A stretch of DNA of 64,000 bases from Octopus bimaculoides (lineage: Eukaryota). The notes beneath the pieces are model-generated. The model worked only from the letters and a program-made list of their open reading frames with translations, was not told where the DNA came from and searched no databases. The position numbers and the translations under genes were made by a program. How positions within the stretch are numbered: position 1 is the first letter of the stretch; every line of letters starts with the position of its first letter. The stretch is taken from the NCBI RefSeq assembly GCF_001194135.2, contig NC_068984.1, positions 17,985,765-18,049,764 on the forward strand. The letters are read 5' to 3'. This document shows positions 53,821 through 56,490 of the stretch, in pieces.

Positions 53821-54918
53821 CAGTACAGATTCATCCAAATAACGTTATGGAAACAAAATGATTAAAAAAAGGAAGACACTAATTAGGAGAAAATGAAGAG
53901 AATAAAAATATTGTGCTTAGTATTTAAACAAGTTTATAAATCCCAATTAAATAACCCCAGACTTTGAGGACATCACCCCCTCCATCTGACCATTGTTTTA
54001 TTTCTTGAAGTTATCATTTCAGTATTTACATCAATATCTGCTGCAGCACTTCAATTTAACTTTGAAGAAAAATGATTCTATTGTTTGTTTGTTTGTTTTG
54101 TTTTTTCCACAAGAAAAGTTTGTAGCAAGCTATTAATTATTTATTATAAAGACAGTTTTGTAATGTTGGTTTGCTACTGAAGCAGACTGTATTTTGAGTG
54201 ATAGAAAAATGTTATTTTAATAAACAGCTATCAATGACCACATATTGAGAAGATAACAAGCTACTTACTTGGTTGTTTACAGTCGTGCTGTTTAAGCAAA
54301 CATTCATAAGAAGCTTACTGGCTCTTTTACTACCTCAGCTTGAAAAATATGTTAGCATGCCTCTGCTGTGCGATTCATCATTAATTCACATATTAGCTAG
54401 TAGAAGCTGCTTCCATGACTTTAAAATGCTGTTAGTGATGTATACAGCAACACTTAAGGCACTGGAAGCTTATTCAGTTATAACAGGAGAGATCATTATT
54501 TTAATACTTTCGCATCCAATTTTCCTTGTTTGCATGAATTGTTGTAGTAACCACAGCTGAATGCTTTTGCTAATATCAACACTTTAATTGTAAAAGGAGT
54601 GGAGTGGGATCTCAGGCTATTTAAAGTAAATCAAGTAATTTGTTTTATTCTGGATAATAGTAGAATGCCATTAAAAACTTTTGACCTTCAAGACTTTTTG
54701 TTTTTTTGTGTGATCAGTAATGTAGACAGCTGCCTATTTATTTTTTCTTGAAATTTCAAATGTTCTGTATTGATAATATTTCACATTAACCCTTCGTTCT
54801 TTTTAGATTTATTTTTTCTTTCAGAGAGTTATTTTTTTAATAGTTGAATATTGTTTCTTTTTTTTATCTTATCAATATGTATTTGTTTATTTGTGAGCAA
54901 AATAATCAAAGCTTATAT

Positions 54919-54986
54919 TATTTTCTTTAATTTTAGGTAAGTAACTAACTTAGTGACTAAGAACCATACCTGAAAATATTGTAAGT
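54919..54986 (+). other. Candidate recursive splice site with an RS-exon (54937-54980)
   Basis: tattttctttaattttAG|GTAAGT at 54935-54942; second GTAAGT donor at 54981; stop codons in all 3 frames of the 44-nt segment. Confidence 0.4.
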
Positions 54987-56490
54987 ATGTTACACAAATT
55001 TTAATTCATCATATAGATTCTTGTAATTACAAGTGTGCAGAGAAAAATGTCCTTCCCAAATTTTATATTAGATAGGTTTTTTCCCCTACCTTTTCCATTG
55101 CATCAGAGCAACTAATTTCTCTTGTATTTAGTTCTGTTATCAATAGCTCTGAGTATATATATCAGTGTACTTTATCAGCATAGCCACGTTTTATAGAATG
55201 CTATATTAAACTATACTGTTCAAGGTTTTAGTTAGATTACTAAAATAGAGCTCAATATACATAATAACAGATTGTTGATAAAAAAAAAAATGAAACAACA
55301 AAAAAAACTAATACCTTAAATGTTATTTTTTTTCTAGGTTTATATCTTTGTGTCTTCTGTACAAATGTTGTTTATAAATATTAATATGGTATCTTGTGAG
55401 AGATGTTATGCATTAGCAATCATTTAGCTTGTAGAAACAGTCATAGACTGATGGAATATAATCCAATTTATGTGACTTATTGAGAGGTCTTTTTACATTC
55501 TGAGAAAAGTTGCATACTAAATGATCTAACTGCAGATAAAGGCAAGGCTCTTGGAATTAGAAGGTTGTTTTTTTTTGTTTTGTTTTTGTTTCTAAAGTAC
55601 AATTGTGAATGAAAATAATCATTAACAGACATCTCTGTCAGCAATATTGTTGCCATTATTGTCAGTTTATAAGTTTGAAAAGGATACTAAGGCATTATGA
55701 CAGATAAAGCACTATAGATTCGTTCTTCAAAAATCTTCAGAAATGGCTTAGCTACAAAAGCAGCTACTAAATTTTCTTCATCTAATACAGAAAAGATCAT
55801 AAAAATTCTTGAGATAATTGATTTCTAGGCACGTTTATGGTATAAATTTAGGTTCCATATATATCTAAAAACTCTTTTTTTCCTCTGAAGTCACTATATT
55901 TGGTATCTTTATTTAAAAATTATTTTTTTGTTTTCCTATTTTCACCTAGTCTCACTCAGCAAGGGATGAAATGGAGTCATTCTCATTCAAAATGAATTAT
56001 ACCAACTCGTTCCATTTTTCCATTACCTTCCATGACAAAACCCCTGACTCTTCAGAGAGAGTTGGCATTTCTTTCGTGTCAGAATCTTATATTAATGCTT
56101 GCTTCAGCTTTCATGGGTTCAACTGGACACCTTCTTATCACACCTCCTGCTACAATCCACTTTCTGACTACACATGCAAACTTTTGAAGATGTATATCAT
56201 TTAAGATAACTTTTTGATCAGACATATCTCTCCATAACATTGACTAATCATAGCAGAAAATAGACATCACACTTGAATTATAGAACACAAGCCATTCTTT
56301 AAATCTCACATTCTTCACAACAAATCTTTCATCACATTACACCATTCAGAGCATAGGTATGCGAGGGAAGATTTATTCACCTTTCATATCTTGGTTGCAA
56401 ATATTCTGAAAGGCAAAAATTATTTTGCTCTCTTACATGGTCTAACAGCTTTACTTTTCTCTTAATTACAAACGTATATGTCTCCATTAA

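What the first reader, a model, noticed from the sequence alone, without database searches (positions are those of the whole stretch)
54780..54990. Recursive-splicing (ratchet point) architecture with a poison RS-exon
A pyrimidine tract and TAG are immediately followed by a perfect donor GTAAGT (54937), the YAG|GTAAGT signature of recursive splice sites. A second GTAAGT lies 44 nt downstream (54981), and the intervening segment has stops in all three frames. That is the RS-exon layout established for long introns in Drosophila and mammals. Further strong pyrimidine/AG stretches lie just upstream (54790-54860). It is the only such perfect junction I found on either strand, in repeat-poor DNA. 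If used, it would indicate stepwise removal of a giant intron in a cephalopod; I am not aware of this being characterised there. A weaker analogue is at 5197-5220 (ttttgtAG|GTTAG|gtaggc).
Basis: partly seen in the sequence, partly recalled or inferred. Interest (0 to 1): 0.7.

Follow-up and report, generated by a model that had tools for sequence, protein, structure and literature searches.

The report
Splice-like motif, probably a chance decoy
The sequence really does look like a textbook recursive splice site, but the core motif is no more frequent than chance predicts and nothing I could test shows that it lies in a transcribed intron or is used, so it is most likely an ordinary decoy.

Summary
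TTTTAG|GTAAGT has its GT at 54937. A second GTAAGT starts at 54981. The 44 nt between them carry stops in all three frames. Acceptor-like tracts lie upstream. It is the only AGGTAAGT on either strand, and it sits in locally unique DNA.

The evidence for function stops at the motif:
- **Core motif:** one AGGTAAGT observed, against 1.3-2.75 expected by chance.
- **Acceptor half:** ordinary, in the top 6.6% of the window's 7,587 AG dinucleotides.
- **Decoy pairs:** acceptor/donor-like pairs are equally common on both strands (87 vs 93).
- **Full composite:** rare per window (about 0.1-1%), but tens to hundreds of chance copies are expected in a 2-5 Gb genome.

I found no exon, protein homologue, RNA family or orthologous DNA. 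Host gene, strand, conservation and use therefore stay untested. A consistent T>A skew on the + strand is only a weak hint of + strand transcription. Two stronger acceptor-like sites, 113 and 131 nt upstream, offer a rival reading: an ordinary cryptic exon ending in a perfect donor.

Best reading: a chance decoy in AT-rich non-coding DNA (about 0.7). A genuine recursive site is about 0.12. Interest is low unless RNA or conservation data say otherwise.

The parts
54912..54916 (+). CTTAT, a branch-point-like match (yUnAy); its A at 54915 lies 21 nt upstream of the AG
   Evidence: A match this loose is expected in roughly half of such 25-nt windows in this AT-rich DNA (my estimate from base composition).
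54917..54936 (+). Acceptor-like half: ATTATTTTCTTTAATTTTAG. It has 15 of 20 pyrimidines upstream of the AG (counted over 54915-54934) and TT at -5/-6.
   Evidence: Generic acceptor PWM gives 5.6 bits, rank 500 of 7,587 AGs (top 6.6%). Only 4-5% of AGGT sites in the window are this pyrimidine-rich.
54937..54942 (+). Perfect donor hexamer GTAAGT directly after the AG (the proposed ratchet-point donor)
   Evidence: As the 9-mer TAG|GTAAGT it scores 10.5 bits, rank 16 of 6,729 GTs. It is the only AGGTAAGT in the window, against 1.3-2.75 expected.
54937..54980 (+). 44-nt segment between the two donors (the proposed cryptic RS-exon), with stops in all three frames
   Evidence: Two of the three stops come from GTAAGTAA itself, so this property carries almost no information.
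54981..54986 (+). Second GTAAGT (the proposed RS-exon donor), in the context ATT|GTAAGT
   Evidence: It scores 5.7 bits as a 9-mer (top 5% of GTs). 2.3% of window positions have a GTAAGT 20-150 nt downstream, and 15-16% have a GTRAG.
54787..54824 (+). Two stronger acceptor-like sites, with AGs ending at 54806 (9.1 bits) and 54824 (9.2 bits)
   Evidence: With the donor at 54937 they would delimit an ordinary 130- or 112-nt non-coding exon (rival reading).
5197..5220 (+).
   Evidence: Joint PWM scores are 10.2 and 10.0 bits, ranks 8 and 10 of 394 AGGT sites, and both donors are weak (GTTAGG, GTAGGC).

Best explanation
The site is a chance juxtaposition of splice-signal look-alikes in AT-rich, T-rich, single-copy non-coding DNA, with no function in splicing. 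A T-rich stretch ending in TAG happens to abut GTAAGT. In DNA of this composition such pieces are common, and the exact 8-mer is expected one to three times per 64 kb. The second GTAAGT and the stop codons are incidental. Shown: the letters, their chance frequencies, the ordinariness of the acceptor half, and the strand symmetry of decoy pairs. Inferred: that the site is not used by the spliceosome in any selected way.
For: - AGGTAAGT is observed once, against 2.75 expected from shuffles and 1.3-2.3 from Markov simulations.
- GTAAGT occurs 12 times on each strand.
- The acceptor half scores 5.6 bits. About 500 of the window's 7,587 AGs score as well or better.
- Acceptor/donor-like pairs 30-250 nt apart number 87 on + and 93 on -.
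- The minus strand has its own AG|GTATGG at 54969, inside the proposed RS-exon.
- No coding exon, protein homologue, Pfam domain, Rfam family or tRNA was detected anywhere in the window.
- In an octopus-like genome (8.36 genes/Mb, median gene 20 kb, median intron 2.5 kb; PMC10700109), an exon-free 64 kb stretch is more likely intergenic than one giant intron.
- Genome-scale chance expectation for a 2.3-5 Gb genome is about 1,700-6,300 copies of pyrimidine tract plus AGGTAAGT, of which about 220-790 also have a GTRAG downstream.
Against: - The full composite is nominally rare per window: P of about 0.006-0.01 with any GTRAG downstream, and 0.002 or less with a second GTAAGT.
- The site ranks 2nd of 394 AGGT sites on a joint acceptor+donor PWM.
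- It shows the TT at -5/-6 found in 196 of 197 fly ratchet points, and an RS-exon length close to the fly value of about 50 nt.
- The + strand has a consistent T>A skew: +4.2% overall, +4.6% in non-repeat DNA, and 44 of 64 1-kb bins. From general knowledge, sense strands of introns in many eukaryotes show this.
- My failure to find exons is weak evidence. The protein searches returned nothing at all, even for ORFs I took by eye for transposon remnants, so I could not show that they would have detected a cephalopod exon.
Confidence: 0.7

Rival explanations
1. The site is a genuine recursive splice site (ratchet point) inside a giant intron of a + strand gene. The 44-nt segment would be defined as a cryptic exon by the acceptor at 54936 and the donor at 54981. 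The upstream exon would be spliced to 54937, which regenerates a strong donor (exon end + GTAAGT). That donor would out-compete ATT|GTAAGT, so the 44 nt and the rest of the intron are removed in a second step. If the 44-nt exon were included instead, it would introduce a stop codon.
For: - All sequence-level hallmarks are present: AG|GTAAGT, TT at -5/-6, a 44-nt segment bounded by a second donor, and a branch-like CTTAT 21 nt upstream of the AG.
- The regenerated donor would probably be at least as strong as the downstream one, which scores 5.7 bits as ATT|GTAAGT.
- The composite is rare by chance in a single window.
- The T>A skew is compatible with + strand transcription.
- The window is exon-free as far as I could test, which a giant intron requires.
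Against: - No host gene, strand, expression or conservation evidence exists.
- The core motif is at chance frequency.
- The pyrimidine tract is only moderate, whereas fly ratchet points have an unusually prominent one.
- Stronger acceptors lie 113-131 nt upstream and would compete.
- There is no clear excess of strong juxtaposed sites on + over - (7 vs 3 at 10 bits or more).
- In mammals only nine fully suppressed intronic ratchet points were noted definitively, although AGGT motifs are everywhere.
Confidence: 0.12
2. The site is an ordinary donor of an unannotated, non-coding or 'poison' cassette or cryptic exon. The exon would start after the stronger acceptor at 54824 (or 54806) and end at 54936, giving ...TTTTAG|GTAAGT, the canonical donor consensus. 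No recursion would be involved.
For: - The acceptors at 54806 and 54824 score 9.1 and 9.2 bits, against 5.6 for the acceptor at 54936.
- The donor 9-mer TAG|GTAAGT ranks 16th of 6,729 GTs.
- An exon of 112-130 nt is a normal size for exon definition (general knowledge).
- AGGTAAGT is the donor consensus in its own right (general knowledge).
Against: - The candidate exon is extremely AT-rich. The 110 nt translated (54827-54936) have stops in every frame.
- It has no homologue.
- 87-93 comparable acceptor-donor pairs per strand exist in this window alone.
- No transcript evidence exists.
Confidence: 0.12
3. The locus has a function unrelated to + strand splicing, for example a - strand transcript or a regulatory element, and the motif is a by-product.
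For: - The minus strand carries its own acceptor-donor juxtaposition (ttttcAG|GTATGG at 54969).
- An imperfect inverted repeat pairs 54912-54925 with 54972-54985.
Against: - The predicted fold is not significantly more stable than shuffles (z = -1.8; 9 of 200 shuffles fold as well).
- There is no Rfam match.
- There are no repeats or ORF homology.
Confidence: 0.05

Closest known systems
Drosophila intronic ratchet points with cryptic RS-exons (Hatton 1998; Burnette 2005; Duff 2015; Joseph 2018; Pai 2018; Joseph & Lai 2021)
   Same: A juxtaposed acceptor and donor with the (Y)nTAG|GTAAGT core, TT at -5/-6, a short cryptic exon (44 nt here, about 50 nt in flies) closed by a second donor, and exon content that is not coding.
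   Different: Fly sites are defined by junction reads, saw-tooth coverage and lariats. Their core motif is ultraconserved, their pyrimidine tract is unusually prominent, and they lie in the longest 3% of introns. None of the functional or evolutionary criteria is shown here. The pyrimidine tract is only moderate and no host intron is established.
Vertebrate recursive splicing through RS-exons (Sibley 2015; Blazquez 2018)
   Same: A cryptic exon beginning with a reconstitutable donor. Competition between that donor and the exon's own donor decides skipping or inclusion, and inclusion would introduce a premature stop (abstract of PMC6224609).
   Different: Vertebrate cases were found from RNA data in long, mostly brain-expressed genes. 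Only nine fully suppressed intronic sites were considered definite. Here there are no RNA data and no gene.
Decoy (pseudo) splice sites and pseudoexons in long non-coding stretches
   Same: Splice-signal look-alikes at chance frequency, symmetrical between strands, unconnected to any exon or homologue.
   Different: This one happens to combine several look-alikes in the exact recursive geometry, which is uncommon in a single window.

Membership tests
Recursive splice site / ratchet point | [quoted passage not shown] | tested here: met
   TTTTAG|GTAAGT at 54931-54942. Donor part scores 8.9 bits, the maximum of the PWM used.
Recursive splice site / ratchet point | Prominent polypyrimidine tract and TT at -5/-6 (196 of 197 fly sites) | tested here: inconclusive
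   TT at -5/-6 is present. The tract has 15 of 20 pyrimidines, interrupted by A's. The acceptor scores 5.6 bits, only the top 6.6% of AGs in the window. The PWM is generic and from memory, not cephalopod-specific.
Recursive splice site / ratchet point | Short cryptic RS-exon closed by a downstream donor that is no stronger than the regenerated donor | tested here: met
   The second GTAAGT lies 44 nt downstream. Its 9-mer ATT|GTAAGT scores 5.7 bits, and the fly RS-exon is about 50 nt. The strength of the regenerated donor depends on an unknown upstream exon.
Recursive splice site / ratchet point | Lies in a long intron, on the sense strand of an expressed gene | tested here: inconclusive
   No exon or homologue was found on either strand, but I could not show that those searches would have detected a cephalopod exon. 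The T>A skew of +4.2-4.6% on + is a weak hint of + strand transcription. Octopus gene density favours an intergenic location.
Recursive splice site / ratchet point | Core motif conserved well above its flanks and above control AGGT sites | not testable with these tools
   No cephalopod genomes are in the searchable collections. The metagenome scans gave 0 hits for a 32-mer and 2 seed-only chance hits for a 19-mer.
Recursive splice site / ratchet point | Splicing intermediates: exon-to-ratchet-point junction reads, saw-tooth intronic coverage, recursive lariats | not testable with these tools
Recursive splice site / ratchet point | Motif occurs more often than chance, or more on the sense than the antisense strand (population-level signature of selection) | tested here: not met
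   One AGGTAAGT against 1.3-2.75 expected. GTAAGT occurs 12 times on each strand. Juxtaposed sites at 10 bits or more number 7 on + and 3 on -, too few to call. A single 64-kb window has little power.
Poison / cryptic cassette exon | Acceptor and donor delimiting an exon of normal size that carries a premature stop, and that is included in some transcripts | tested here: inconclusive
   The signals are present: acceptors of 9.1 and 9.2 bits at 54806 and 54824, a donor of 10.5 bits at 54937, and stops in all frames. Inclusion in transcripts is not testable.

The most novel reading that the evidence does not exclude
The site is a bona fide, selected ratchet point with a 44-nt cryptic RS-exon in a giant intron of a cephalopod gene. 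As far as the held literature shows, it would be the first recursive splice site described in a lophotrochozoan. That would imply that stepwise removal of very long introns is either ancestral to bilaterians or evolved repeatedly wherever introns became huge.
Probability: 0.1. Interest if true: 0.6.

Novelty: not a real feature. Interest (0 to 1): 0.15.

Why it matters
If the site were used, it would extend recursive splicing from flies and vertebrates to cephalopods, animals with very large genomes. It would also give a concrete locus for testing how their spliceosome copes with long introns. As it stands it mainly illustrates that the recursive-site consensus alone has little predictive value in AT-rich DNA. 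Thousands of chance copies are expected per genome, so candidates need RNA or conservation evidence before they merit attention.

Tried and rejected
**Protein searches for exons**
- One query held every six-frame ORF of 24 aa or more in 53900-57280 plus the most protein-like ORFs of the window. A second held the next 172 ORF segments ranked by amino-acid composition. Both returned 0 hits.
- Composite queries of about 5,000 aa cost roughly 13 bits more than a short single-ORF query, so only near-exact matches of about 35 aa or more would have been seen.
- A third search used two ORFs that I took by eye for retrotransposon tails. It found nothing either. I therefore do not claim them as transposon remnants, and I treat the negative exon result as weak.

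**Other database and structure checks**
- Pfam on the ten best ORFs found nothing above cut-off.
- Rfam at gathering thresholds and ARAGORN found nothing.
- A crude ab initio exon scan (acceptor + open frame + donor) gave no convincing exon. The best candidate is on the minus strand at 9898-10020.
- Local repeats, tandem repeats and RNA folding around the site showed nothing significant.

**Search for orthologous DNA**
- A 32-mer scan of metagenome contigs gave 0 hits.
- A 19-mer scan gave 2 contigs, which match the window only over the 22-nt seed.

**Indicators of transcription direction**
- AATAAA occurs 82 times on + and 112 on -, which the base skew fully explains.
- SINE orientation is 6 vs 3, which is not informative.

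One Markov simulation timed out and was rewritten.

Full report
**What is there.** The + strand reads ...agCTTATattattttctttaatttTAG|GTAAGTaactaacttagtgactaagaaccatacctgaaaatatt|GTAAGTatg.
- The AG is at 54935-54936. The first GTAAGT is at 54937-54942 and the second at 54981-54986, 44 nt later.
- The intervening 44 nt have stops in all three frames. Two of these are supplied by GTAAGTAA itself, so this property carries almost no information.
- Upstream, two acceptor-like tracts end at 54806 (cccttcgttctttttAG) and 54824 (tttattttttctttcAG).
- AGGTAAGT occurs once in the window on both strands together.
- The 54-56 kb region shares no repeat with the rest of the window and has no notable local or tandem repeat.
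- The 'weaker analogue' at 5208-5220 is as described, but both of its donors are poor.

**Is it more than chance?**
- The window is 33% G+C with T>A.
- Dinucleotide-preserving shuffles give 2.75 ± 1.84 copies of AGGTAAGT, and 95 of 100 shuffles contain at least one. Markov simulations of order 1, 3 and 5 give 1.3-2.3. One copy is at or below expectation.
- GTAAGT occurs 12 times on each strand, and four of those 24 sit in the head of a SINE-like repeat.
- Requiring at least 15 of 20 pyrimidines upstream, as here, lowers the expectation to 0.05-0.08 per window. Only 4-5% of the window's AGGT sites are that pyrimidine-rich.
- Adding any GTRAG 20-150 nt downstream gives P of about 0.006-0.01. Adding a second exact GTAAGT gives P of 0.002 or less.
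- The full composite is therefore nominally uncommon in one window. However, the criteria were chosen after seeing the site. A 2.3-5 Gb genome would contain about 1,700-6,300 chance copies of tract + AGGTAAGT, of which about 220-790 also have a downstream GTRAG.

**How good are the two halves?** I used a generic metazoan PWM, approximated from memory and not cephalopod-specific.
- The donor is as good as it can be. TAG|GTAAGT ranks 16th of 6,729 GTs.
- The acceptor is ordinary: 5.6 bits, rank 500 of 7,587 AGs.
- The joint score ranks 2nd of 394 AGGT sites, almost entirely because of the donor.
- The two upstream acceptor-like sites are clearly stronger, at 9.1 and 9.2 bits.
- Acceptor/donor-like pairs spaced 30-250 nt number 87 on + and 93 on -.
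- The minus strand has its own AG|GTATGG at 54969, inside the proposed RS-exon.

Splice look-alikes are thus abundant and strand-symmetric in this DNA.

**Comparison with described recursive sites.**
- Fly ratchet points are juxtaposed acceptor/donor motifs with a very prominent pyrimidine tract. TT occupies -5/-6 in 196 of 197 cases, and conservation is well above that of control AG|GT sites (10.1101/006163; PMC6110457).
- They head a cryptic RS-exon of about 50 nt with its own donor. [quoted passage not shown]
- The present site has the core, the TT, a 44-nt segment with a second donor, and a branch-like CTTAT whose A lies 21 nt upstream of the AG.

At the level of letters, then, the site matches. 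What defines membership is use and selection: junction reads, saw-tooth coverage, lariats, conservation, and location in a very long sense-strand intron. None of these could be tested here.

**Gene context.**
- I found no coding exon on either strand. No ORF is longer than 204 aa, and the long ORFs are low-complexity or repeat-derived.
- Two composite protein searches covered all local ORFs and the most protein-like ORFs of the window. Neither gave a hit.
- Pfam on the ten best candidates gave nothing above cut-off.
- A crude acceptor-ORF-donor scan gave nothing convincing.
- Rfam and tRNA scans were empty.
- These negatives are weak. Composite queries lose sensitivity. A third search, using ORFs I took by eye for transposon remnants, also returned nothing, so I could not show that the searches would have detected a cephalopod exon.
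- One indirect hint exists. The + strand has a steady T>A skew: +4.2% overall, +4.6% outside repeats, and 44 of 64 1-kb bins. From general knowledge, sense strands of introns in many eukaryotes show this. The G-C skew is nil, and repeats can produce similar local skews.
- In O. vulgaris, gene density is 8.36 per Mb, the median gene is 20 kb and the median intron is 2.5 kb (PMC10700109). If the window comes from such a genome, an exon-free 64 kb is more likely intergenic than one giant intron.

**Conservation.** No cephalopod DNA is in the searchable collections. A 32-mer across the junction found nothing in the metagenome contigs. A 19-mer found two contigs, which match the window only over the 22-nt seed.

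**Weighing the readings.**
- The prior that a given position lies in a + strand giant intron is low. I put it at about 0.1-0.25 after allowing for the skew.
- How often cephalopods use recursive sites is unknown. I found no paper linking the two.
- In mammals only nine fully suppressed intronic ratchet points were considered definite, despite ubiquitous AGGT motifs.
- Against that, the composite is rare by chance in a single window.
- My estimates are about 0.7 for a functionless decoy and about 0.12 for a genuine recursive site. I give about 0.12 to an ordinary cryptic or non-coding exon (54807 or 54825 to 54936) ending in a perfect donor, and about 0.05 to something else.

**Verdict.** Its interpretation cannot be decided with these tools and has no support beyond the motif itself. 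Interest is low (0.15). It would rise to about 0.6 if RNA or conservation data showed the site is used.

Noticed in passing
window 53447-53821; other copies at 3838-4216, 25455-25770, 31444-31824, 35144-35316, 38166-38384, 41610-41849, 43650-43774, 57952-58163: A SINE-like dispersed repeat of about 300-380 nt with at least 9 copies. The sense strand appears to be the reverse complement of the 53447-53821 copy. By eye the head looks tRNA-like (GGTTCAGTCC resembles a B box), and there is an internal (CA)/(TA) microsatellite. ARAGORN and Rfam do not recognise it. The head contains GTGGTAAGTAGCT, so each copy seeds a strong donor-like motif: 4 of the window's 24 GTAAGT come from it.
   Followed up: partly
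window, whole length: A steady T>A skew on the + strand (+4.2% overall, +4.6% outside repeats, 44 of 64 1-kb bins) with no G-C skew. This is compatible with + strand transcription but is not proof. The AATAAA deficit on + (82 vs 112) is fully explained by the skew.
   Followed up: partly
window 54912-54925 and 54972-54985: An imperfect inverted repeat (CTTATATTATTTTC / GAAAATATTGTAAG). In RNA it would pair the branch-point and pyrimidine-tract region with the second GTAAGT and loop out the AG|GTAAGT junction. The fold is not significant against shuffles (z = -1.8).
   Followed up: yes
window 9898-10020, minus strand: The best exon-like candidate in the window: a 123-nt open frame between a strong acceptor-like site (11.2 bits) and a strong donor-like site (10.1 bits). 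No protein homologue was found and the peptide does not look convincing.
   Followed up: partly
window 3663-3830, 9684-9693, 11194-11222, 16356-16365, 21738-22231, 37459-37468, 46193-46339: Seven runs of N (868 bases in total), three of them exactly 10 N. The window comes from a gapped scaffold assembly, so sequence, possibly including short exons, is missing.
   Followed up: no
window 41456-41857, 43046-43192, 43576-43836, 44347-44909, 4924-5060, 37205-37282: Dense (TA)n/(CA)n-type microsatellite blocks. They give the long pseudo-ORFs rich in [12 protein letters not shown] and account for most of the high-copy self-matches.
   Followed up: no
window 29028-29330 (+), 44012-44334 (+), 2383-2685 (-): ORFs that reminded me by eye of retrotransposon (reverse-transcriptase tail or zinc-knuckle) remnants. 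Neither Pfam nor the protein search supports this, so the identification is unconfirmed.
   Followed up: yes
window 54969, minus strand: A minus-strand acceptor-donor juxtaposition (atattttcAG|GTATGG; 9.7 bits) lies inside the proposed RS-exon. It shows how easily such motifs arise in this DNA.
   Followed up: yes
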